Below the pieces are notes generated by a model. The model had not been told where the DNA came from. It saw only the letters and a list, made by a program, of their open reading frames with translations, and searched no databases. DNA of 6,951 nucleotides from positions 1-6,951 of the IMG/VR virus record IMGVR_UViG_3300033830_000018, one strand, 5' to 3'. How positions within the stretch are numbered: position 1 is the stretch's first letter; each line of letters starts with the position of its first letter. Below, one piece after another: positions 203-6,951 of the stretch. The position numbers and the translations under genes are program-made.

Positions 203-239
203 GGTATAACTCATAATTATATAATAGGTGAAAACACAT

Positions 240-434
240 ATGGTTGAAATAAAGTTAAGATGGAGGATAAAGTCAACGAAAAAGAATGGTAAGGTATACC
301 CTCTATATTATATATCAGTACCAGGTAAATCGGCTGTTTTTTTATTGCAATACGAACCATATTTAGACCCAGAAAGGCAAATAATCTTTTTCAGACCCAA
401 GCAGAACCAAAGCCAACAACCACAAAGTCAATAA
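240..434 (+). CDS. Small basic protein (64 aa), possible AbrB/SpoVT-like swapped-hairpin DNA-binding protein
   Basis: ORF track 228..434. ATG 240 is preferred because GGTGA (227-231) is a Shine-Dalgarno 8 nt upstream. The basic beta-rich N-terminus with KNGKVYPLYYISVP resembles the AbrB-type 'YxITIP' hairpin; Q/S-rich tail. The family call is by eye. Confidence 0.6.
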   Translation: MVEIKLRWRIKSTKKNGKVYPLYYISVPGKSAVFLLQYEPYLDPERQIIFFRPKQNQSQQPQSQ

Positions 435-463: not shown

Positions 464-1417
464 CTAAGCTAAGATAATCCTATTTAATATATAATTTAGT
501 TTCAGTCTCGGAAAGTCAGCTAAGTACCTTGGCGATATTTTACCTGACATTTCGTTGTACTGATATGCGATACTTAGCATGAAATTTGCCATGTCTAGTT
601 CTAATAAGCCTGGAGAATAGCTCTTGTCCCCGTAGTATCTCGAATAGATAGATATTGGGGATTCGTTTATAAGATCCGATATATTTTTGACAATATATTT
701 ATGCAAATCGAATATATTATTCAGGTTGCGTATTAATTCTTTATAACTTGCCTTATCCAAGGTGTACGCGTTATGAGATTTTAAGAAATTAAGGATGAAT
801 AACCCTAACCCCGTAGTCGTATACTTTCTCTTCTTCCCTTCATCGTTCGGGCTGATCTCACTGCTTAGACCCATTAGCAAAAGAGGGACAAGCCCGTTGC
901 GGAGATTTTCAACAGATAAATTATTGCAAGCGTCACCGCACACCTCCTTCGCAAACCTTAGGGCATCTTTTAATTCCGCGTTCAGCAGGGGGAGTTGAGA
1001 GTTGAAAATGTAAAGGTATTCACGCAAAGTCAATTTATTTATTGGGTTGTCTAGCTTCTCAGCTATTTTTAGAGATTTCATAGAGTCTGTTAATATTAAA
1101 AAGGAGAATATTGAGGCTTCCCTGACCCTGTAATATTTATCATCAATCAACTCAACTCCAGTAAATTCCGATATTGAATTAGCGTACTCGTCAGCCTTTT
1201 CCGTAAGCTTATCAAATACCTCTGGAAAACCCGACGCAGTCAGAGTTCTAATTTTTGCTGGCACGACAAAACCGTTTTTAGCTAATTCAATAACCTTAAG
1301 TGATGTTTTCTCAGCCTTGGTGCGTTTTGGACTCGTCCTGACGAGATCGACGAAGAATTCAAAGGAGTCGTTGACGATGTTTTTATTACCTTCTTCTTGA
1401 TAAAAATCCATAGCCAT
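464..1417 (-). CDS. Hypothetical protein (317 aa), predicted largely alpha-helical
   Basis: Long ORF with ATG at 1417. The minus-strand TATA-like TTTAAAAA (1447-1440) ends 23 nt upstream, consistent with a leaderless mRNA. No motif recognised. Confidence 0.85.
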   Translation of the reverse strand: MAMDFYQEEGNKNIVNDSFEFFVDLVRTSPKRTKAEKTSLKVIELAKNGFVVPAKIRTLTASGFPEVFDKLTEKADEYANSISEFTGVELIDDKYYRVREASIFSFLILTDSMKSLKIAEKLDNPINKLTLREYLYIFNSQLPLLNAELKDALRFAKEVCGDACNNLSVENLRNGLVPLLLMGLSSEISPNDEGKKRKYTTTGLGLFILNFLKSHNAYTLDKASYKELIRNLNNIFDLHKYIVKNISDLINESPISIYSRYYGDKSYSPGLLELDMANFMLSIAYQYNEMSGKISPRYLADFPRLKLNYILNRIILA

Positions 1418-1439
1418 ACTTTAATTTAGGGGAAACTCG

Positions 1440-1447
1440 TTTTTAAA
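1440..1447 (-). promoter_or_regulatory. TATA box for the 317-aa gene
   Basis: Minus strand reads TTTAAAAA at leaderless spacing from ATG 1417. Confidence 0.6.
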
Positions 1448-1454
1448 CTTAAAC

Positions 1455-1470
1455 AACAGCTGTTTTAGAG
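1455..1470. repeat. Palindromic motif copy 1 (AACAGCTGTTttagag)
   Basis: Perfect 10-bp palindrome at 1455-1464; 1455-1470 is identical to 1771-1786. Confidence 0.85.
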
Positions 1471-1485
1471 GTATCTAGCTCGTCA

Positions 1486-1521
1486 TTTTCAGTCTAACTA
1501 GTTGGGCAGAAAATTTAAATA
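1486..1521 (+). promoter_or_regulatory. Conserved promoter module copy 1: imperfect inverted repeat + BRE (GCAGAAAA) + TATA (TTTAAATA 1514-1521)
   Basis: ttttc-agtc-taac-ta-gttg-ggca-gaaaa-tttaaata. TATA ends 24 nt before ATG 1545 (leaderless). Aligns without gaps to 1810-1845 and 2316-2351. Confidence 0.85.
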
Positions 1522-1544
1522 TCAGTCCTAACAATAGTTAAATA

Positions 1545-1736
1545 ATGACGCCCCAAGAAGTAGTAAAGGAAGAAATCATAAAAATGTTAGAAAAGGACTT
1601 CGACCAGCTACAAAAACTTATTGATTATATTGCAAAGACAAAAAATTTAGATTTAGACAGGAAAAAGGTTGGCGAAGCTTATTTTTTAGCCCAGAAAATT
1701 GACATGGAGTTATATAGATTAATTCTCTTGATCTAA
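1545..1736 (+). CDS. Small helical hypothetical protein (63 aa)
   Basis: ORF with its own consensus promoter at leaderless spacing and a downstream T-tract; amphipathic charged helices. Confidence 0.85.
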   Translation: MTPQEVVKEEIIKMLEKDFDQLQKLIDYIAKTKNLDLDRKKVGEAYFLAQKIDMELYRLILLI

Positions 1737-1747
1737 AAACTAACCCG

Positions 1748-1764
1748 TTTTTTATTTACTTTTT
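1748..1764 (+). terminator. Oligo-T terminator
   Basis: ttttttatttactttttt-like tract starting 12 nt after the stop; near-identical tract at 2236-2253. Confidence 0.7.
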
Positions 1765-1786
1765 CTCTCAAACAGCTGTTTTAGAG
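1765..1786. repeat. Palindromic motif copy 2 (CTCTCAAACAGCTGTTTTAGAG)
   Basis: 22-bp inverted repeat with a single mismatched pair, centre CAGCTG at 1773-1778. Confidence 0.9.
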
Positions 1787-1809
1787 TTGTTTCGCCGTAC
1801 CCAGCGTCC

Positions 1810-1845
1810 TTTTCTGCCTAACCTATTGGGCAGAAACTTTATATA
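1810..1845 (+). promoter_or_regulatory. Conserved promoter module copy 2 (TATA TTTATATA 1838-1845)
   Basis: ttttc-tgcc-taac-ct-attg-ggca-gaaac-tttatata. TTTCTGCC (1811-1818) and GGCAGAAA (1829-1836) form a perfect 8-bp inverted pair. Confidence 0.85.
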
Positions 1846-1875
1846 TTTCCAAACGAATATTATAATGGCGAAAAT

Positions 1876-2235
1876 ATGAGAACTCAAAAGGCTCAAAAGG
1901 GAAATAGAAGTCAAGAAGAAAACAAATTGTATTTTTGCAACCTTTGTGGTTTTATTGCAGAAAGTTATGAAGAACTTGATATGCATTATACGTTTGAACA
2001 CGACCCAGACCCCGATCTTGGTTATGAATTAGAAGTGATGTGGGAAAACAAAAAGAAAAAGAAGAAAGCAAAAGGTTTGAAGGGAAAGGCATTTGAACAG
2101 CTAGAATTATTAATAAACGGTGAGGATTACAAAAACGAGTATGTCGGATGGTGCCATATTCCTTACGAAATAATAACAAGGAAGAAAGGCAACAGATACG
2201 TAATTAAGGTCGTTCCAGGAGTTGAAATTTGTTAA
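1876..2235 (+). CDS. C2H2 zinc-finger protein (119 aa)
   Basis: C-x2-C-x12-H-x4-H motif (YFCNLCGFIAESYEELDMHYTFEH), then acidic DPDPD and a poly-Lys tract; has its own promoter and terminator. Confidence 0.85.
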   Translation: MRTQKAQKGNRSQEENKLYFCNLCGFIAESYEELDMHYTFEHDPDPDLGYELEVMWENKKKKKKAKGLKGKAFEQLELLINGEDYKNEYVGWCHIPYEIITRKKGNRYVIKVVPGVEIC

Positions 2236-2253
2236 TTTTTTTATTTATTTCTT
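2236..2253 (+). terminator. Oligo-T terminator
   Basis: tttttttatttatttctt immediately after TAA 2235. Confidence 0.7.
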
Positions 2254-2255
2254 CT

Positions 2256-2273
2256 CTCAAACAGCTGTTTGAG
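2256..2273. repeat. Palindromic motif copy 3 (CTCAAACAGCTGTTTGAG, perfect 18 bp)
   Basis: Perfect 18-bp palindrome read directly; centre CAGCTG at 2262-2267. Confidence 0.92.
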
Positions 2274-2315
2274 GTCTCTTTCTTTCCTCCTCTCCACCGA
2301 CCGCTCCAACTCCGT

Positions 2316-2351
2316 TTTTCCTCCTAACTGGTTATGCAGAAAATTTAAATA
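2316..2351 (+). promoter_or_regulatory. Conserved promoter module copy 3 (TATA TTTAAATA 2344-2351)
   Basis: ttttc-ctcc-taac-tg-gtta-tgca-gaaaa-tttaaata. GCAGAAAATTTAAATATC is identical to copy 1. Confidence 0.85.
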
Positions 2352-2382
2352 TCTGAGTTAGCACATATATAATTGATCAAAT

Positions 2383-2961
2383 ATGTCCTCTCCACAAGTT
2401 AAGTCAAGCCCCCAACCACAAGTCAAAACAAATCCTAATTCTATAAATCAAACAAATGCTAGTCAAATAACCTGGGAGACCATCTTAAGGTCTCCCAGGA
2501 TTACCAAGGAACATGTAGAGTATGCAATTAACAATATTGATCAAGCTCCATTACTGCCCCATGAATTTGTTTACAGTCAAGTCGCTACTGATGTCAAAAT
2601 CTCCTACCCCCGCTCTATCGCAATTAGTGGTGTAGGTGGTATAATTGGTGCAGTACTTTCAATAAAACACACCGATAACATATCTTATTTCGTAACTACT
2701 GAGGAAGTTATTAATGCAACCGAGAATTCACCACTGTTTCTCGCAAAGTTCTCGTTAGAAAAACTAAGTAAAATCTATCAAAATACTGAGGTTATCATCC
2801 TGAAACTGAATGAATTTGAGAAAATTAAGTTGTTGCTAAGTCAAGGAGGAGTCTATATTTCTGGTTTGCCATATGAGATTACTATTCAGATAGCACAACT
2901 AGCGGGGTTTGGTAGGCTTTGGCACTTTTCACCAATTCAGCAAAAATTCTTTGTATTCTGA
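2383..2961 (+). CDS. Hypothetical protein (192 aa), possibly a degenerate P-loop/AAA+ (DnaC/IstB-like) fold
   Basis: ORF with its own promoter. S/P/Q/N-rich N-terminus followed by an alpha/beta pattern. The fold assignment is inference (see findings). Confidence 0.8.
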   Translation: MSSPQVKSSPQPQVKTNPNSINQTNASQITWETILRSPRITKEHVEYAINNIDQAPLLPHEFVYSQVATDVKISYPRSIAISGVGGIIGAVLSIKHTDNISYFVTTEEVINATENSPLFLAKFSLEKLSKIYQNTEVIILKLNEFEKIKLLLSQGGVYISGLPYEITIQIAQLAGFGRLWHFSPIQQKFFVF

Positions 2962-2976
2962 GTATTCTGATTCTGA
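2953..2976 (+). repeat. Short tandem repeat GTATTCTGA x2 + TTCTGA
   Basis: gtattctga-gtattctga-ttctga spans the stop codon of the 192-aa gene and runs into the next ribosome site. Confidence 0.75.
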
Positions 2977-2989
2977 GGTGGCGACAAAA

Positions 2990-3748
2990 ATGACCGAATT
3001 TGAACTTGAGATAAAAAAGTTTAGATGGTTAATTTCCCAGGGTTATATAACACCACAAGAACTGGCATTTTACTCCAACTTTTACGATATCCAGATGACC
3101 AGTACTGTGAATTTTCAAGGATATGAGATATTGACTCCATTGTTTGTGTTGGCGAGACCAAGCAAGTTTGACCAAGTAAAAAGAGAACTGCCTCAGGCAG
3201 AAATAGCAGATCCATATAGCAAAAAGTTCCCATTAATTTCATTGATAAGTCTAGAAAAATTCATTAACACTCTAGTTAATCTCAAAATACCATACTACTT
3301 CTTCTCAGTGTGGTTGCATAGATCGTATAATGATATTCCAGAATCAGGTCAATTATTACTGAGTAAGCTCATTAATATGGCGAATTCTTCCTACAAATAT
3401 GTTATAAAAAGTTATAACATCCCTTCATCATCTTCAGAAGAACCAGCATTACCAACGGATCTAGAGAAAATAATATGTCATTTCAGGAAAATGTTGGGTA
3501 ATAAGGATAACTGCGACGATAATGACTGGTGGAAGTATAATTTGTGGAACAAATCTAGTGTAACTGGTACTACAACTGCAAATAGTACAACAACCATCGG
3601 AAGGAAAGAAATAGAGAAGTTAGCGTTGAAATACAATGTATCACCAATTTGTTTACAGTACGTTATAATGTATAACAAAAACCCGTGTCACCTTTCCCCA
3701 TTTCTTCTGCTCCAAATCAAATCAGACCTCTCTTCTTCCTCTTCATAA
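2990..3748 (+). CDS. Hypothetical protein (252 aa)
   Basis: ORF track 2909..3748. The in-frame ATG at 2990 is preferred because GAGGTG (2975-2980) precedes it and it avoids overlap with the upstream gene. Ser and Thr low-complexity linkers separate small Cys/His-containing C-terminal segments. Confidence 0.85.
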   Translation: MTEFELEIKKFRWLISQGYITPQELAFYSNFYDIQMTSTVNFQGYEILTPLFVLARPSKFDQVKRELPQAEIADPYSKKFPLISLISLEKFINTLVNLKIPYYFFSVWLHRSYNDIPESGQLLLSKLINMANSSYKYVIKSYNIPSSSSEEPALPTDLEKIICHFRKMLGNKDNCDDNDWWKYNLWNKSSVTGTTTANSTTTIGRKEIEKLALKYNVSPICLQYVIMYNKNPCHLSPFLLLQIKSDLSSSSS

Positions 3749-3771
3749 TTTTTTCCTCTCTTCCTCTCCTT
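3749..3771 (+). terminator. Oligo-T/pyrimidine terminator between convergent genes
   Basis: ttttttcctctcttcctctcctt directly after TAA 3748. Confidence 0.6.
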
Positions 3772-3772
3772 A

Positions 3773-4294
3773 TCACAGGGTATTCGTATTCTCCTTTCTC
3801 TCTCTTTTCGCTATCTTTTTTGCATCTATTACTTCTATTATTCCCTCTTCCTCCAGATATTCTAGCACTGCGTCGCTATCATCTATCACTATTACCTTAT
3901 CTTGGTCGTATTTTTCCATTAGCTCCTTTACGATAATTCTCTTAAACTCATGGTCTTTTCTGTAGTCCTTCTCACCTCTCAGCACGACCTCATTCGGCTC
4001 TATCCCTATCTCTGACAGCTGTTTGAGAGTTTCCTTACGTTGTTTTTCCGAACGACCGCTGACTACTGCTATCACTTCTGGCTTTTCCTCCTCAATTAAT
4101 CGTTTGACGAACCTGATAACTTCCCACTTAGGTTCGTCCAGGTTCATGAACCTCGGTGATTGATAACATTCCCAAAACACACGGTCGGGTGTCCAAGATA
4201 ATGTTTTCTTGTCTCCTCTGGATATCTTCTCGCATTCGTACCACCTAGCAGAAGTATCGAAAAGCGTGCCGTCCAAATCTAGGATTAGCATCAT
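3773..4294 (-). CDS. HAD-superfamily phosphatase, similar to the 3'-phosphatase domain of T4 polynucleotide kinase/phosphatase (PseT)
   Basis: All four HAD motifs are present: I LILDLDGTL, II VVSGR, III RKDHEFK, IV VIDDSD. SGR, R-K-D-x3-K and DD match the PNKP phosphatase pattern. ATGA overlap with the upstream gene and a GGTGGAGG ribosome site. Confidence 0.9.
   Translation of the reverse strand: MMLILDLDGTLFDTSARWYECEKISRGDKKTLSWTPDRVFWECYQSPRFMNLDEPKWEVIRFVKRLIEEEKPEVIAVVSGRSEKQRKETLKQLSEIGIEPNEVVLRGEKDYRKDHEFKRIIVKELMEKYDQDKVIVIDDSDAVLEYLEEEGIIEVIDAKKIAKRERKENTNTL
4010..4029 (-). repeat. Palindromic motif copy 4, intragenic (minus strand CTCTCAAACAGCTGTCAGAG)
   Basis: 15-nt exact match (CTCTCAAACAGCTGT) to copies 2 and 3; lies inside the HAD gene, coding TLKQLSE. 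Confidence 0.65.
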
Positions 4295-4851
4295 TTTCCT
4301 CCACCTTGTTGTTTAAAACCTAGTATTGTTATCTCTCCATTCACTTCTTTGAAGTCTAACTCCTTAGCTTTCCCCTCGCGGTTATATACGAGCCACAATA
4401 CTTCGGCACCGTTTTCGTCTTTCCCCCATTTTAGTTTGCTACATTTCCCATCAAATTTAGTATAAAAGTAGTTTATCGCTTCCTGGTCATTTTTTTCTTC
4501 TTGCAGTTTGTCTAACGTAGCTGGGTCAAACGGTTGATCAAATAGGTAGATCTTCTTATTACCTTTTCCGTCATCAAAAACGAAATATATCCCGAATTTG
4601 AACCCGTTAAGGTTTGAAGTTGCCATTAGGTCGCGATGTTTCCTGATAAATTCGTTATCCGCAACAGCAGAAATATAAAGAGTGTCATGTCCGTCACCTA
4701 TGCCTATACATAATAAGTTTGCATGTGCGGGTTTGTCGGCTTTTACGTAGAAAGCGACGTATGTTACAGCAATGGTTGGTGTAGTTTTGGGTATGTACCC
4801 GTGGACACGCACTATGAAAAACTTATCTATGCTGATTGACGAGCTTACCAT
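4291..4851 (-). CDS. Hypothetical beta-rich protein (186 aa)
   Basis: ORF with TATA TTTTTAAA (4882-4875, minus strand) ending 24 nt before ATG 4851; translationally coupled to the HAD gene. Confidence 0.85.
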   Translation of the reverse strand: MVSSSISIDKFFIVRVHGYIPKTTPTIAVTYVAFYVKADKPAHANLLCIGIGDGHDTLYISAVADNEFIRKHRDLMATSNLNGFKFGIYFVFDDGKGNKKIYLFDQPFDPATLDKLQEEKNDQEAINYFYTKFDGKCSKLKWGKDENGAEVLWLVYNREGKAKELDFKEVNGEITILGFKQQGGGK

Positions 4852-4873
4852 GCTAAATACTTCACGCGATATT

Positions 4874-4889
4874 CTTTAAAAAAGTCGAG
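4874..4889 (-). promoter_or_regulatory. Leftward promoter CTCGACTTTTTTAAAG
   Basis: Leaderless spacing to ATG 4851; resembles 185-202. Confidence 0.7.
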
Positions 4890-4895
4890 TTAGTT

Positions 4896-4913
4896 CTCAA
4901 ACATATGTTTGAG
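4896..4913. repeat. Palindromic motif copy 5 (CTCAAACATATGTTTGAG, perfect 18 bp)
   Basis: Same arms as copy 3 with the central GC replaced by TA; sits between divergent promoters. Confidence 0.9.
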
Positions 4914-4934
4914 GAAACGACTTATTTTGTCTTA

Positions 4935-4942
4935 TTTTTAAA
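4935..4942 (+). promoter_or_regulatory. Rightward TATA box (TTTTTAAA)
   Basis: Ends 24 nt before ATG 4966. Confidence 0.7.
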
Positions 4943-4965
4943 CCTTTTTGCGAGAAGTTAAAGAC

Positions 4966-5253
4966 ATGAAGCCAGAGTGTAAAGTTCTTTTAAAGGCGTT
5001 CGAAAGTCTTTCTTCTATTCAAAGTAAATATGATGAAGATTTTCCTGAAATGCTATCGTACATGTATCTTCTGCTAAAGGGGTACTGGAGAGTTAACGAT
5101 GACGGAGAAACTGAAGAAGTGAAAACACCGCCGTTTACGACTATATCCCTCCTTAACGCCATGAGAGAAATCACGAAAAGAATTAGGAACGGTACCACAA
5201 TCGAAGAAATCATAAGCGAAAAGGAATTATGCGGGGATGTTGAGGAGGTATGA
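4966..5253 (+). CDS. Acidic hypothetical protein (95 aa)
   Basis: The ORF track starts at TTG 4948, but ATG 4966 (MKPECK...) is at leaderless distance from the TATA; ATGA overlap with the next gene. Confidence 0.8.
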   Translation: MKPECKVLLKAFESLSSIQSKYDEDFPEMLSYMYLLLKGYWRVNDDGETEEVKTPPFTTISLLNAMREITKRIRNGTTIEEIISEKELCGDVEEV

Positions 5254-5666
5254 CAGCAATAAATTCAACCGTGATAAATGCGTTACCTCCTTTTTTCTAC
5301 ACACAGGTCTTTCTTGTTGATATCGCAGGAGGGTTCATTATAATGACAATAATTGAGCTGTTTCTGCTAAGAAACAGTAGCCTAACCCATCTACGACTTG
5401 CTTTGCCGTTCCTAACGTTTTCTCTCGGGTTTACTCTTATATCGTTATATCTTTCTCCATACATAACATATAACCCAGTATACACTACGCCGTACAACGT
5501 AACGTACAGGATTACGCCCTACAGTACCGATGGTGCTGTTCTTCTATACATCAGTATCGCAATCCTTGCCATGGCTATAGCATACTTTATTTATGCGTTT
5601 GCGGTCGATGTGTTGCACCTTTCTTTTGGTGGTGGTAGTAAAGATGATGGTTATTTCATACCTTAG
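5250..5666 (+). CDS. Membrane protein (138 aa, about 3 transmembrane helices)
   Basis: Three hydrophobic stretches (VFLVDIAGGFIIMTIIELFLL, LALPFLTFSLGFTLISLYL, GAVLLYISIAILAMAIAYFIYAFAV); GAGGAGG ribosome site; Y/T/P-rich loop with an NVT sequon. Confidence 0.85.
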   Translation: MTAINSTVINALPPFFYTQVFLVDIAGGFIIMTIIELFLLRNSSLTHLRLALPFLTFSLGFTLISLYLSPYITYNPVYTTPYNVTYRITPYSTDGAVLLYISIAILAMAIAYFIYAFAVDVLHLSFGGGSKDDGYFIP

Positions 5667-5677
5667 GGGTAATACCC

Positions 5678-6256
5678 ATGTTAATGTTTAAGAAAAAAAC
5701 GTTGCCAATCGTCTATAAGAATTACGACGCATTATTATTTTTGCCCCCAGCCATAGTCAGCATTGATAAAAAAACGAGGATAATAGAAAAAAATGGCGTA
5801 CATGTTGCGATAATGTATTCGGAAACCAACGGCATTTCTGTGATGATGGATTTGCCCATTGATTTTCTGAAATTATACTATAAGATGACTACACAAGTAA
5901 ATCAGGGGAACCCCAGTGACAGGATAGTCTATTTTGCAATAGTTTACATTTCTCCGCAAGCGTATGCAAGAGAAAGAGCAAAAGTACTAAAAATGAGTAC
6001 GAACACTAAAAAGAAGTTTTTCATCTTCCCAAGGTGGATTTGGCTCAACCTGGAGCGTCATAACGATACGATGAGTTATTTCGTCATGAACAAATTTGAA
6101 GACGATGACCCTGCAAACTATTCGAAGGAATTCGACACATTCGGTGCCGTTGGGATTACCTTCAACAATTACTTTATTTTCGCTAGTGTTGCGAGAAAGG
6201 AGTACATAGCTTCTGTAAATAAACAAATATCCCTCGGTGTGGGGGTGGGGTTATAA
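5678..6256 (+). CDS. Hypothetical protein (192 aa)
   Basis: ORF 11 nt after the previous stop with a GGGGT ribosome site; TAATG overlap with the next gene. Confidence 0.82.
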   Translation: MLMFKKKTLPIVYKNYDALLFLPPAIVSIDKKTRIIEKNGVHVAIMYSETNGISVMMDLPIDFLKLYYKMTTQVNQGNPSDRIVYFAIVYISPQAYARERAKVLKMSTNTKKKFFIFPRWIWLNLERHNDTMSYFVMNKFEDDDPANYSKEFDTFGAVGITFNNYFIFASVARKEYIASVNKQISLGVGVGL

Positions 6257-6780
6257 TGTCTCTCTCATATTTGCAATCACTCGTTGGGAAAAATGTGATA
6301 TTATTCAACTATCTACGTAATGTATTCAAAAATAAAATATACAAAATAGTCGAAAATGGGGACGAATATACTCTTTATATTGATATGGGGATAGCTAGTA
6401 GGTTACAGCACAGGATCACATATCCTGGGATTTACTTCATTACGGATGTAATGATACAGGGTACCAACTATGTAATTTTTCTAAAAAAACAAGTCGACCT
6501 GAAGAAGTTTGCAATAGTAAGCTCTGTAACAACTTCTGAATATTACGTATCTTCGTACCGTAAAATACAGTATAAAACCGATGAGGGGTACATATTCGAC
6601 GCTTTAGAATTCGATATAGGCGGGTTCAAGCACCTTACATTTAACTATAATAAATGTATTATAGCGAAAGCGAAAAAGACTGGTCATAAGCGTATTGCGT
6701 TATGCCTAGGTGATAGTGTTATAATTGAAGATATAAATGATGTTTCGTGCAGTGACTGTGAGTGGTTTACGGTTGAGTAG
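6256..6780 (+). CDS. Hypothetical beta-rich protein (174 aa) with C-terminal cysteines (CxxC)
   Basis: Coupled ORF with a G-rich ribosome site (GGGGGTGGGG); four Cys in the last ~45 aa, including CSDC. Confidence 0.82.
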   Translation: MSLSYLQSLVGKNVILFNYLRNVFKNKIYKIVENGDEYTLYIDMGIASRLQHRITYPGIYFITDVMIQGTNYVIFLKKQVDLKKFAIVSSVTTSEYYVSSYRKIQYKTDEGYIFDALEFDIGGFKHLTFNYNKCIIAKAKKTGHKRIALCLGDSVIIEDINDVSCSDCEWFTVE

Positions 6781-6791
6781 GGTGATGGACA

Positions 6792-6951
6792 ATGGTATAT
6801 AATAAAAAGGACGAAGTCCCTTCTGCCGAGCAATTCCAATTTATTGTGTATAAAGAGGTATGTATGGGGAACAGTAGTATGGTATATCCTACTTTAGCTA
6901 TAGAGAGGCTGAACACTGTAATGCTTACCTATTACAGCGACGAGATAGAAG
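6792..6951 (+). CDS. Hypothetical protein, 5' fragment running off the window
   Basis: Not in the ORF track. GGTGA (6781-6785) precedes ATG 6792; the frame is open to the end: MVYNKKDEVPSAEQFQFIVYKEVCMGNSSMVYPTLAIERLNTVMLTYYSDEIE. Confidence 0.75.
   Translation, partial: MVYNKKDEVPSAEQFQFIVYKEVCMGNSSMVYPTLAIERLNTVMLTYYSDEIE

What the first reader, a model, noticed from the sequence alone, without database searches (positions are those of the whole stretch)
1545..2235. Small genes behind near-identical strong promoters are candidate anti-defence (anti-CRISPR-like) or host-takeover genes
Seen: 63-aa and 119-aa monocistronic genes, each with a consensus purine-rich BRE, TTTAWATA and a terminator. 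Established: in Sulfolobales viruses, characterised anti-CRISPR and other anti-defence genes are typically small, expressed immediately after infection and preceded by conserved strong promoter sequences. Inference: these cargo genes, and the 192/252-aa pair, are candidates of that type. I do not recognise either as a known Acr.
Basis: partly seen in the sequence, partly recalled or inferred. Interest (0 to 1): 0.6.

Follow-up and report, generated by a model that had tools for sequence, protein, structure and literature searches.

The report
Early-promoter accessory gene cassettes, monocaudavirus
Two small genes of a hot-spring Sulfolobus virus sit behind copies of one strong promoter already published as a marker of candidate anti-defence genes; both belong to known but functionally untested protein families, so this is a new member of a known kind.

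Summary
The 63-aa (1545-1736) and 119-aa (1876-2235) ORFs each follow a copy of one BRE+TATA core and end before a T-rich tract. A third copy precedes the 192/252-aa pair. The core occurs 3 times against 0.00 expected.

The window is a fragment of a Sulfolobus monocaudavirus (84% nt identity to SMV4, 77% to SMV3).

The inference is only partly supported, and it is not new. Bhoobalan-Chitty et al. 2024 (PMC11065993) list the SMV3 orthologues, found by the same promoter logic, as ADG.67 (63-aa), ADG.04 (119-aa) and ADG.71 (192-aa).

- **63-aa protein:** a member of the SSV1 D-63 family (PF20940, PDB 1SKV). It is acidic, its family is described as ROP-like, and it has no detected HTH or RHH DNA-binding domain.
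- **119-aa protein:** an acidic single C2H2 zinc finger, a Lys-rich linker and a small alpha/beta domain. Its finger is homologous to SIRV3 gp06, which weakly relieved type III-B interference in one published assay.
- **192/252-aa pair:** homologues of ATV ORF187 and ORF326a, annotated as virion structural proteins.

The genes behave as exchangeable cassettes, with identity breakpoints in the conserved intergenic modules. Host CRISPR spacers in a hot-spring metagenome target both small genes. No RNA data exist, so early expression and any anti-defence activity remain untested.

The parts
1455..1470 (.). Degenerate copy of the CAGCTG-centred palindrome, next to the TATA-like box of the divergent 317-aa gene
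   Evidence: (D4, I25)
1481..1522 (+). Promoter module 1. It holds an imperfect palindrome (about 1485-1513) whose right arm is the purine-rich BRE (1506-1513), followed by the TATA box TTTAAATA (1514-1521).
1545..1736 (+). 63-aa gene, SSV1 D-63 family (acidic, pI 5.3). The ATG lies 24 nt after the TATA box ends, so the mRNA probably has little or no leader.
   Evidence: PF20940, E 5.6e-16; 1SKV, E 6e-8
1693..1734 (+). Protospacer inside the 63-aa gene. In metagenome run X1 this stretch is flanked on both sides by a Sulfolobales-type CRISPR repeat. CCC at 1690-1692 fits a CCN PAM.
   Evidence: (loose ends)
1748..1766 (+). T-rich tract, the putative terminator of the 63-aa gene
   Evidence: D5
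1766..1785 (.). Palindrome TCTCAAACAGCTGTTTTAGA, a copy of a motif dispersed through SMV genomes
1805..1846 (+). Promoter module 2. It carries the best palindrome (TTTTCTGCC N10 GGCAGAAA, fold z-score -5.07), the BRE and the TATA box TTTATATA (1838-1845). Its leader is conserved in orthologous loci.
1876..2235 (+). 119-aa gene. It encodes an N-terminal C2H2 zinc finger (C21, C24, H37, H42 invariant), a Lys-rich linker and a C-terminal alpha/beta domain with invariant C93 and C119. It is the orthologue of SMV3 gp47 (ADG.04).
1977..2018 (-). Protospacer inside the 119-aa gene. It is flanked by the reverse-complement CRISPR repeat in run X1, so the crRNA would be complementary to the mRNA. The PAM is CCA, the reverse complement of 2019-2021.
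2236..2255 (+). T-rich tract, the putative terminator of the 119-aa gene
   Evidence: D5
2255..2274 (.). Perfect 18-bp palindrome CTCAAACAGCTGTTTGAG
2311..2352 (+). Promoter module 3, with TATA box at 2344-2351, ahead of the 192/252-aa pair
2383..2961 (+). 192-aa gene. It is a homologue of ATV ORF187, SMV4 gp39 and SMV3 gp46, falls in PHROG 17386 'virion structural protein', and is also listed as ADG.71.
2990..3748 (+). 252-aa gene. It is preceded by GAGGTGG, so it is probably co-transcribed with the 192-aa gene. It is a homologue of ATV ORF326a and falls in PHROG 16306 'virion structural protein'.

Best explanation
The two genes are independent, single-gene accessory cassettes in the variable region next to the integrase of an SMV-like monocaudavirus (Bicaudaviridae).

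**Promoter.** Each cassette carries the virus's 'ADG-type' promoter. A consensus TATA box and a purine-rich BRE should recruit host TBP, TFB and RNA polymerase without any viral factor. This would give strong expression as soon as the genome enters the cell. That timing is inferred by analogy with SIRV2. The BRE is half of a roughly 28-bp imperfect palindrome, which is most simply a site for a dimeric repressor that later shuts the class off. Candidates are the RHH genes that sit behind the same promoter in SMV4 and SMV1. None lies in this fragment.

**Products.** Both look like binders, not enzymes.
- The 63-aa protein belongs to the D-63 family, whose solved member is described as a ROP-like dimeric four-helix bundle. 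It is acidic and has no detected HTH or RHH DNA-binding domain.
- The 119-aa protein has an acidic C2H2 finger whose canonical DNA-contact positions are Ser, Glu, Glu and Met. This is followed by a Lys-rich linker and a small helix-plus-sheet domain.

**Most likely role.** I judge them to be early proteins that act by binding a host or viral macromolecule. A true anti-defence function is plausible but unproven. I put it at about 0.4 for the 119-aa protein and 0.3 for the 63-aa protein.

**The 192/252-aa pair.** These are more likely virion-associated proteins that share the same promoter class.
For: **Shown here.**
- Virus identity and synteny with SMV4, SMV3 and SMV1.
- Three copies of the promoter core against 0.00 expected.
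- 26 distinct module instances in relatives share the consensus CTAAC-NN-GTTAG-GCAGAAA-TTTAWATA.
- In SMV genomes the same core precedes a DUF1874/AcrIII-1-family gene, RHH genes, other D-63-family genes and the published ADGs.
- The 63-aa protein matches PF20940 at 58.7 bits against a cut-off of 27, and PDB 1SKV over its full length. The family is acidic.
- The CCHH residues of the 119-aa protein are invariant in 13 sequences. Its finger superposes on solved C2H2 fingers at 0.7-1.0 A over about 27 residues.
- The finger is 41% identical to SIRV3 gp06, which lies in the SIRV3 acr locus, and 50% identical to SIRV9 gp33.
- The genes are accessory. The block 490-4843 is absent from SMV1. SMV4 has a different gene in place of both small genes. 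SMV3 lacks the 317-aa gene.
- The cassettes are exchanged. Against locus L010, identity is 96-100% up to position 1799, falls to 61-76% across the 119-aa gene, and returns to 90% in the next intergenic module.
- Host CRISPR spacers with CCN PAMs target both genes.

**From papers.**
- The promoter-based ADG prediction and its listings (PMC11065993).
- SIRV3 gp06 raised reporter activity and mRNA under type III-B targeting at P<0.05 (PMC10681719).
- D-63 is ROP-like and lies in the early T5 transcript (PMC9608457, PMC6080066).
Against: - No expression data exist. No RNA run holds the sequence, and the early-expression link was established for SIRV2, not for bicaudaviruses.
- The promoter class is not specific to anti-defence genes. 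It also drives RHH regulators and homologues of proteins annotated as virion structural.
- SIRV3 gp06 had only a weak effect, none in the Cmr-alpha-only strain, and its authors did not pursue it.
- D-63 has been proposed instead as a copy-number regulator.
- Neither protein matches a known Acr family.
[quoted passage not shown] With the Lys-rich linker, this fits DNA binding or regulation.
- The structure models have only moderate confidence (pLDDT 65 and 76).
Confidence: 0.6

Rival explanations
1. The two proteins regulate the virus itself and do not inhibit host defence. The D-63-like protein would be a ROP-like adaptor that controls episomal copy number or RNA-RNA interactions. The zinc-finger protein would be a DNA-binding, chromatin-like or transcription factor. 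Under this reading the 63-aa protein could also be the Aca-like regulator of the shared promoter, as its 'ADa' label in PMC11065993 implies.
For: - D-63 was proposed as a copy-number regulator because of its similarity to ROP.
- The SMV3 orthologue is labelled 'ADa, helix-turn-helix protein'.
- The 119-aa protein has a Lys-rich linker, and the top (weak) matches of its C-terminal domain are HU/IHF in two independent libraries.
- C2H2 proteins of fuselloviruses are generally predicted to be regulators.
- The palindrome over the BRE needs some binding protein.
Against: - The D-63 family is acidic (pI 4.8-5.9), and no HTH or RHH family was detected in the 63-aa protein. As I recall the D-63 structure, the RefSeq label 'helix-turn-helix protein' describes an alpha-helical hairpin and not a DNA-binding HTH.
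- SMV4 uses the same promoter module at three or more sites yet has no D-63 homologue and no homologue of the 119-aa protein. Neither can therefore be the obligatory regulator of that module.
- The recognition-helix positions of the finger are Ser, Glu, Glu and Met, with the two Glu invariant. This is unfavourable for canonical DNA contact (plus general knowledge of C2H2 recognition).
- The HU/IHF resemblance is below any reliable threshold.
Confidence: 0.28
2. The shared promoter marks highly expressed virion or virion-packaged proteins. The small proteins would be minor structural or packaged components delivered with the genome, as ATV ORF145/RIP is.
For: - The third promoter copy drives homologues of ATV ORF187 and ORF326a, which carry the PHROG and RefSeq label 'virion structural protein'.
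- ATV ORF145 is both an abundant virion protein and a host RNA polymerase inhibitor (PMC5123050).
Against: - SMV1 forms virions without this whole block.
- The 63-aa and 119-aa genes are present or absent independently among close relatives.
- I could not trace the 'virion structural' label to its primary data with these tools.
- D-63 relatives lie in early, non-structural transcripts of fuselloviruses.
Confidence: 0.07
3. The ORFs or the promoters are chance features of AT-rich sequence.
For: The bare octamer TTTAWATA is not rare by count: 2.6 are expected in the window.
Against: - The 17-nt core has an expectation of 0.00 and is found 3 times.
- The module and its leader are conserved in seven other loci.
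- Both proteins have conserved homologues, and one matches a Pfam family and a solved structure.
Confidence: 0.01

Closest known systems
SSV1 D-63 (Pfam PF20940; PDB 1SKV), including SMV3 gp48 (ADG.67) and SMV2 gp51 (ADG.65)
   Same: - Full-length homology: 58.7 bits against a cut-off of 27, and 1SKV at E 6e-8 over residues 4-61.
- About 60 aa long and acidic.
- Found in a Sulfolobales virus, close to the integrase and early region.
- In SMV2 and SMV3 the homologue sits behind the same promoter core.
   Different: - Here it is a stand-alone cassette with its own promoter and terminator. In fuselloviruses it is an internal gene of the T5 operon.
- It is only 41-47% identical to the SSV proteins and 42% to SMV3 gp48.
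- The function is unknown in every member.
ADG.04 of Bhoobalan-Chitty et al. 2024 (SMV3 gp47 and SIRV3 gp06), plus the rudiviral SIRV5-9 proteins of phrog_18124
   Same: - 70% identity to SMV3 gp47 over the full length.
- The N-terminal C2H2 finger is shared with SIRV3 gp06 (41%) and SIRV9 gp33 (50%).
- The promoter class is the same.
   Different: - SIRV3 gp06 is the finger alone (48 aa).
- SIRV9 gp33 has an unrelated C-terminal half.
- The C-terminal domain found here occurs only in the monocaudavirus-like group of 14 proteins. No stand-alone copy of it was found.
Aca8-controlled acr promoters of SIRV2 and other rudiviruses, and the SMV2 ADG motif with its proposed leucine-zipper repressor gp37
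   Same: - A strong BRE+TATA is repeated before several single small genes.
- An inverted repeat overlaps the BRE, as described for SMV2.
- One member of the class is a known Acr family (DUF1874, in SMV4).
   Different: - No Aca8 and no gp37 homologue is present in the window, SMV1, SMV3 or SMV4.
- The candidate regulators here are RHH proteins instead.
- Early timing has not been shown for bicaudaviruses.
ColE1 ROP (repressor of primer)
   Same: The literature describes D-63 as structurally similar to ROP.
   Different: No sequence relationship to ROP was tested or seen here. No antisense RNA system is known in these viruses.
ATV ORF187 and ORF326a, annotated as virion structural proteins (for the 192/252-aa pair)
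   Same: 54% and 36% identity over more than 84% of the length. The adjacent gene order is the same.
   Different: Here, and in SMV3, the pair sits behind the ADG-type promoter. The pair is absent from SMV1.

Membership tests
SSV1 D-63 family (PF20940) | Sequence match above the curated Pfam cut-off over the whole domain | tested here: met
   58.7 bits against a cut-off of 27, E 5.6e-16, residues 4-60 on profile positions 2-59 of 60. phrog_7928 matches at E 7.6e-14.
SSV1 D-63 family (PF20940) | Homology to the solved D-63 structure (1SKV) | tested here: met
   phmmer E 6.1e-8, residues 4-61 aligned to 3-61 of 1skv_A. Core positions are conserved in an 8-sequence alignment.
SSV1 D-63 family (PF20940) | Forms the dimeric four-helix bundle | not tested
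   This is inferred from homology only. I did not fold the 63-aa protein and ran no complex prediction.
Anti-defence gene (ADG) as operationally defined in PMC11065993 | A single gene with a predicted strong promoter (BRE + TATA) | tested here: met
   TATA boxes lie at 1514 and 1838, each with the purine-rich BRE GCAGAAA. Each gene has its own T-rich terminator.
Anti-defence gene (ADG) as operationally defined in PMC11065993 | The regulatory sequence around the promoter is shared with other genes of the same genome | tested here: met
   Three modules in the window are 74-81% identical over 42 nt. The consensus is shared with 26 instances in relatives. The orthologues are listed as ADG.67, ADG.04 and ADG.71.
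Anti-defence gene (ADG) as operationally defined in PMC11065993 | Immediate-early expression | not testable with these tools
   No RNA run holds the sequence.
Anti-CRISPR protein (functional class) | Inhibits a CRISPR-Cas system | not testable with these tools
   The only indirect data are for SIRV3 gp06, the finger-only homologue. It gave P<0.05 relief of type III-B RNA interference in strain E233 and none in a Cmr-alpha-only strain (PMC10681719).
Known archaeal Acr families (AcrID1, AcrIIIB1, AcrIII-1/DUF1874, AcrIIIB2) | Sequence similarity to a characterised Acr | tested here: not met
   Pfam, PHROGs and NCBIfam give no Acr family for either protein. tblastn hits in phage records fall on no annotated Acr. 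The DUF1874 model did detect SMV4 gp61, which serves as a positive control. I cannot say whether these libraries cover AcrID1, AcrIIIB1 or AcrIIIB2.
Aca-type regulator (HTH or RHH DNA-binding protein that autoregulates acr promoters) | A recognisable DNA-binding domain | tested here: not met
   The 63-aa protein shows no HTH or RHH family and has pI 5.3. SMV4 has the promoter module but no D-63 homologue.
C2H2 zinc finger | C-X2-C-X12-H-X4-H ligands with the conserved Leu, and the beta-beta-alpha fold | tested here: met
   C21, C24, H37, H42 and L34 are invariant in 13 sequences. The modelled finger superposes on CTCF and BCL11A fingers at 0.7-1.0 A over 27-28 residues. TFIIIA is the top VIA match at Z 4.1.
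C2H2 zinc finger | Pfam score above the gathering threshold | tested here: not met
   The best C2H2 model scores 18.5 bits against a cut-off of 27.
C2H2 zinc-finger DNA-binding transcription factor | Basic or polar base-contacting residues at helix positions -1, 2, 3 and 6 | tested here: not met
   The positions are S30, E32, E33 and M36, with E32 and E33 invariant. The finger region has pI 4.9. The rule itself comes from general knowledge of C2H2-DNA recognition.
ATV ORF187/ORF326a 'virion structural protein' families (for the 192/252-aa pair) | Sequence homology | tested here: met
   phrog_17386 at E 2e-83 and phrog_16306 at E 2e-104. tblastn to ATV gives 54% and 36% identity.
ATV ORF187/ORF326a 'virion structural protein' families (for the 192/252-aa pair) | Physically present in virions | not testable with these tools
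   This rests on a database label only. The primary source was not found in the paper library.

The most novel reading that the evidence does not exclude
The conserved intergenic units (T-tract, CAGCTG palindrome, 28-bp BRE palindrome, TATA box) may act as portable recombination joints. They would let monocaudaviruses swap, delete and insert single-gene counter-defence cassettes at a hot spot beside the integrase, giving a promoter-flanked cassette system that works somewhat like an integron.

Within it, the 119-aa protein would be a two-domain inhibitor. Its gp06-like acidic zinc finger would target type III-B, possibly Cmr-beta. The genome-wide CAGCTG palindrome, with about 30 copies per SMV genome, would be the operator of an undescribed global viral regulator.
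Probability: 0.15. Interest if true: 0.6.

Novelty: new member of a known kind. Interest (0 to 1): 0.3.

Why it matters
Few archaeal anti-defence proteins have been validated experimentally, so well-chosen candidates have value. This locus adds natural variants of three published candidate families (ADG.67, ADG.04, ADG.71).

It also adds three things that help decide what to test:
- The genes move as separate cassettes, with breakpoints in the conserved promoter modules.
- Hosts in the same kind of hot spring carry CRISPR spacers against both small genes.
- The zinc finger links the 119-aa protein to SIRV3 gp06, the only relative with any assay data.

Two cautions follow. The shared promoter also drives regulators and proteins annotated as structural, so promoter-based anti-defence calls need functional tests. 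The 'ADa' label on the D-63-like protein appears to rest on the 'helix-turn-helix' product name, which I understand to describe an alpha-helical hairpin and not a DNA-binding domain.

Tried and rejected
- **RNA evidence.** No RNA run holds the region, so timing and transcript ends could not be tested.
- **Known Acr or Aca families.** Pfam, PHROGs and NCBIfam gave nothing for either protein.
- **Fold of the 119-aa protein.** Foldseek against the PDB gave nothing at E<=0.001. Only the zinc finger matched locally. VIA-wide gave Z<=4.1.
- **C-terminal domain folded alone.** pLDDT was 76.5. The top hits were HU/IHF at Z 3.1 and TM 0.56. This is a lead only and I do not claim it.
- **Word search with the C-terminal domain alone.** No candidates were found.
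- **SMV4 gp40 as a diverged D-63 or 119-aa relative.** This gene replaces both small genes in SMV4. BLASTP gave E 0.086 and 0.30, and hhalign gave 4% probability, so I rejected the idea.
- **SMV2 gp37, the proposed leucine-zipper repressor.** It has no homologue in the window, SMV1, SMV3 or SMV4.
- **The 63-aa or 119-aa protein as regulator of the shared promoter.** I rejected this because SMV4 has the promoter but neither gene.
- **Primary source for the 'virion structural' label of ATV ORF187/ORF326a.** It was not found in the library. The Kraft et al. 2004 D-63 paper is not held.
- **A paper hit on 'D63'.** It concerned a crRNA named D63 and is irrelevant.
- **Rfam and tRNA scans of the window.** Both were empty.
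Full report
**What the window is.** Megablast places the 6951-nt window, an IMG/VR fragment, in the Sulfolobus monocaudaviruses (Bicaudaviridae). It covers 89% of the window at 83.6% identity to SMV4 and 74% at 77.6% to SMV3. Only the two ends (1-489 and 4844-6951) match SMV1, at 76% and 91% identity.

The gene order is:
- the 3' end of the integrase (1-180);
- a basic 68-aa ORF;
- a 317-aa gene on the minus strand;
- the 63-aa gene, the 119-aa gene and the 192/252-aa pair;
- a HAD-family polynucleotide-kinase-type phosphatase (minus) and a 186-aa gene (minus);
- a conserved core block.

The block 490-4843 is missing from SMV1. SMV3 lacks the 317-aa gene. In SMV4 the 63-aa and 119-aa genes are replaced by an unrelated 147-aa gene, gp40. 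The finding therefore lies in a variable accessory region beside the integrase.

**The observation.** Both ORFs are present. TTTAWATA occurs only three times in the window, at 1514, 1838 and 2344, each upstream of one of the three starts. The 17-nt BRE+TATA core GCAGAAANTTTAWATAT is found three times without mismatch, against 0.00 expected. The 42-nt modules are 74-81% identical. T-rich tracts follow both stops. 'Monocistronic' and 'strong' remain inferences, because no RNA run holds the sequence.

I aligned 26 distinct instances of the module from the window, SMV1-4 and IMG/VR relatives. The consensus is TTTtCt.cCTAACt.GTTagGCAGAAAaTTTAaATAt. This is an imperfect palindrome of about 28 bp whose right arm is the BRE. 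Copy 2 is the most symmetric, with a fold z-score of -5.07.

Bhoobalan-Chitty et al. 2024 described the same arrangement for SMV2, an inverted repeat overlapping the BRE, and read it as a repressor site (PMC11065993). The leader between the TATA box and the ATG is conserved per downstream gene class. The modules are therefore orthologous and under constraint, not recent copies.

A second, unrelated palindrome (CAAACAGCTGTTTG) lies between each terminator and the next promoter.

Supplementary Data 1 of PMC11065993 lists these entries, all found by the promoter criterion:
- SMV3 gp47 as ADG.04, together with SIRV3 gp06;
- SMV3 gp46 as ADG.71;
- SMV4 gp40 as ADG.72.

These genes are 42%, 70% and 65% identical to the 63-aa, 119-aa and 192-aa products.

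In the complete SMV genomes the same core precedes:
- SMV4 gp61, a STIV_B116/DUF1874 protein of the AcrIII-1 family (E 6e-18);
- SMV4 gp58, an RHH/CopG protein;
- SMV2 gp37, gp39, gp41, gp51 and gp52;
- SMV3 gp69 and gp71;
- in SMV1, an unannotated RHH ORF.

The promoter marks a co-regulated class that includes one known Acr family, but also regulators.

**The 63-aa protein.** It belongs to the SSV1 D-63 family. It scores 58.7 bits against PF20940 (cut-off 27) and matches PDB 1SKV at E 6e-8 over its full length. Other members are SMV3 gp48 and the C-terminal two-thirds of SMV2 gp51. SMV4 and SMV1 have none.

Reviews describe D-63 as structurally similar to ROP, of unknown function, and encoded in the early, variable T5 transcript. 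A role in copy-number control has been suggested (PMC9608457, PMC3367457, PMC6080066).

The family is acidic (pI 4.8-5.9), and no HTH or RHH family was detected in the 63-aa protein. As I recall the structure, the 'helix-turn-helix' label refers to an alpha-helical hairpin. SMV4 keeps the promoter module without any D-63 homologue, so this protein is unlikely to be the module's regulator. A small acidic dimer that binds a partner is the most economical reading. The partner is unknown.

**The 119-aa protein.** Fourteen relatives were found, all from hot-spring metagenomes or SMV3. C21, C24, H37 and H42 are invariant, in a C-X2-C-X12-H-X4-H pattern with L34. C93 and the C-terminal C119 are also invariant.

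The full-length model has pLDDT 65. It shows a beta-beta-alpha finger, a helical Lys-rich linker, and a helix followed by four strands. The finger superposes on solved C2H2 fingers at 0.7-1.0 A. Positions -1, 2, 3 and 6 of the recognition helix are Ser, Glu, Glu and Met, and the finger region has pI 4.9. This argues against canonical DNA reading.

The finger is homologous to SIRV9 gp33 (50% over 64 aa, with a different C-terminus) and to the 48-aa SIRV3 gp06 (41%). SIRV3 gp06 lies between AcrID1 and an AcrID1-family gene. It was tested as an Acr candidate in PMC10681719. In S. islandicus E233 it raised reporter activity and mRNA under type III-B targeting (P<0.05). It had no effect in a Cmr-alpha-only strain and was not pursued. 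This is the only experimental hint for the family.

The C-terminal domain, folded alone, has pLDDT 76.5. Its top hits are weak HU/IHF-like matches (Z 3.1; TM 0.56), which I treat as a lead only. No stand-alone copy of this domain was found.

**The 192/252-aa pair.** They match PHROGs 17386 and 16306 ('virion structural protein') at E 2e-83 and 2e-104. They are homologous to the adjacent ATV genes ORF187 and ORF326a. GAGGTGG lies before the second ATG, which suggests co-transcription.

Two points soften the conflict. SMV1 lacks the pair. ATV ORF145/RIP shows that a virion protein can also act on the host at entry (PMC5123050).

**Cassette behaviour and arms-race signals.** Against IMG/VR locus L010, identity is 96-100% over 400-1799. 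It drops to 61-76% across the 119-aa gene and returns to 90% in the next intergenic module. Other loci combine different alleles, lack the 63-aa or 317-aa gene, or carry an extra minus-strand cassette between the 119-aa and 192-aa genes.

Metagenome contigs show joints that skip 1524-1851, 1542-2249 and 515-1481. Their flanks are short, so this evidence is weak.

In run X1, window 1693-1734 and 1977-2018 are each flanked by a repeat ending in the ATTGAAAG handle of Sulfolobales crRNAs. Both have CCN PAMs (the handle is shown). Hosts therefore hold CRISPR spacers against both genes. This shows CRISPR pressure on the virus. It says nothing about what the genes do.

**Verdict.**
- The 63-aa protein is a D-63-family member.
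- The 119-aa protein is an ADG.04 member with a gp06-like finger.
- The 192/252-aa pair is more likely virion-associated.

The most likely mechanism is immediate, factor-independent expression of small binding proteins from a repressible strong promoter. Anti-defence activity is plausible but untested. I rate the finding as a new member of a known kind, with interest 0.3.

Noticed in passing
window 1766-1785, 2255-2274, 4009-4028, 4895-4914 (degenerate copy at 1455-1470); SMV1, SMV3 and SMV4 genomes: The palindrome CAAACAGCTGTTTG (up to 2 mismatches) occurs about 32, 32 and 28 times in SMV4, SMV3 and SMV1, and 7 times in SMV2. The reversed-pattern control gives 0-1. In annotated stretches 19 of 28 copies are intergenic, although intergenic DNA is only 15% of the sequence (p = 3.5e-10). 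Copies often lie 50-65 nt upstream of gene starts or directly beside a TATA box. This looks like the operator of a global regulator. I found no description of it.
   Followed up: partly
window 1693-1734 and 1977-2018 (another near 5507): Contigs of hot-spring metagenome run X1 carry these stretches flanked by a Sulfolobales-type CRISPR repeat ending in ATTGAAAG. Both have CCN PAMs. They are host spacers against the 63-aa and 119-aa genes.
   Followed up: partly
L006 (SMV1 NC_023585) 1875-1915 and 1949-2152, + strand of the locus: The single ADG-type promoter module in SMV1 precedes an unannotated 67-aa RHH/CopG ORF (PF01402, E 1.3e-7). This ORF lies opposite the annotated gp40, which may be mis-called. 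SMV4 gp58, also RHH, has the same promoter. Both are candidate Aca-like repressors of the module.
   Followed up: partly
L010 2195-2470 (-) and L008 2678-2980 (-): Some relatives carry an extra 91-100-aa cassette between the 119-aa and 192-aa genes. It has a poly-Glu C-terminal tail, is very acidic and is of unknown function.
   Followed up: no
L008 about 2190-3062, matching window about 2189-2278: In this relative the 3' end of the 119-aa gene is displaced by an insertion of roughly 700-870 nt. This gives a 139-aa variant (P0002) with a different C-terminus.
   Followed up: no
window 490-4843: The whole 4.35-kb block, from the 317-aa gene to the 186-aa gene, is absent from SMV1. There the 68-aa gene is followed directly by the gene that matches window 4966-5253.
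   Followed up: yes
window 3773-4294 (-): This gene encodes a HAD-family phosphatase of the polynucleotide-kinase type (PF25109, E 2.4e-11; phrog_415). It is 86% nt-identical to Acidianus tailed spindle virus. A copy of the CAGCTG palindrome lies inside its coding sequence at the same place in SMV3 and SMV4.
   Followed up: no
window 228-434 (+): A basic ORF (pI 10) of 64-68 aa lies next to the integrase in SMV1, SMV3 and SMV4; in SMV2 the only matches lie within gp40, as two tandem copies about 2 kb from the integrase. GGTGA lies before the ATG at 240, which suggests that is the true start. No family was detected.
   Followed up: no
window 464-1417 (-) and 4291-4851 (-): The 317-aa and 186-aa proteins have no Pfam, PHROG or NCBIfam match. 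In SMV4 the 317-aa gene is annotated as two ORFs, gp41 and gp42.
   Followed up: no
window 1865-1879: A 4-codon ATG ORF (ATG GCG AAA ATA TGA) overlaps the start of the 119-aa gene within the conserved leader. Relatives have GGGGG or GAGGG there, which looks like a Shine-Dalgarno sequence.
   Followed up: no
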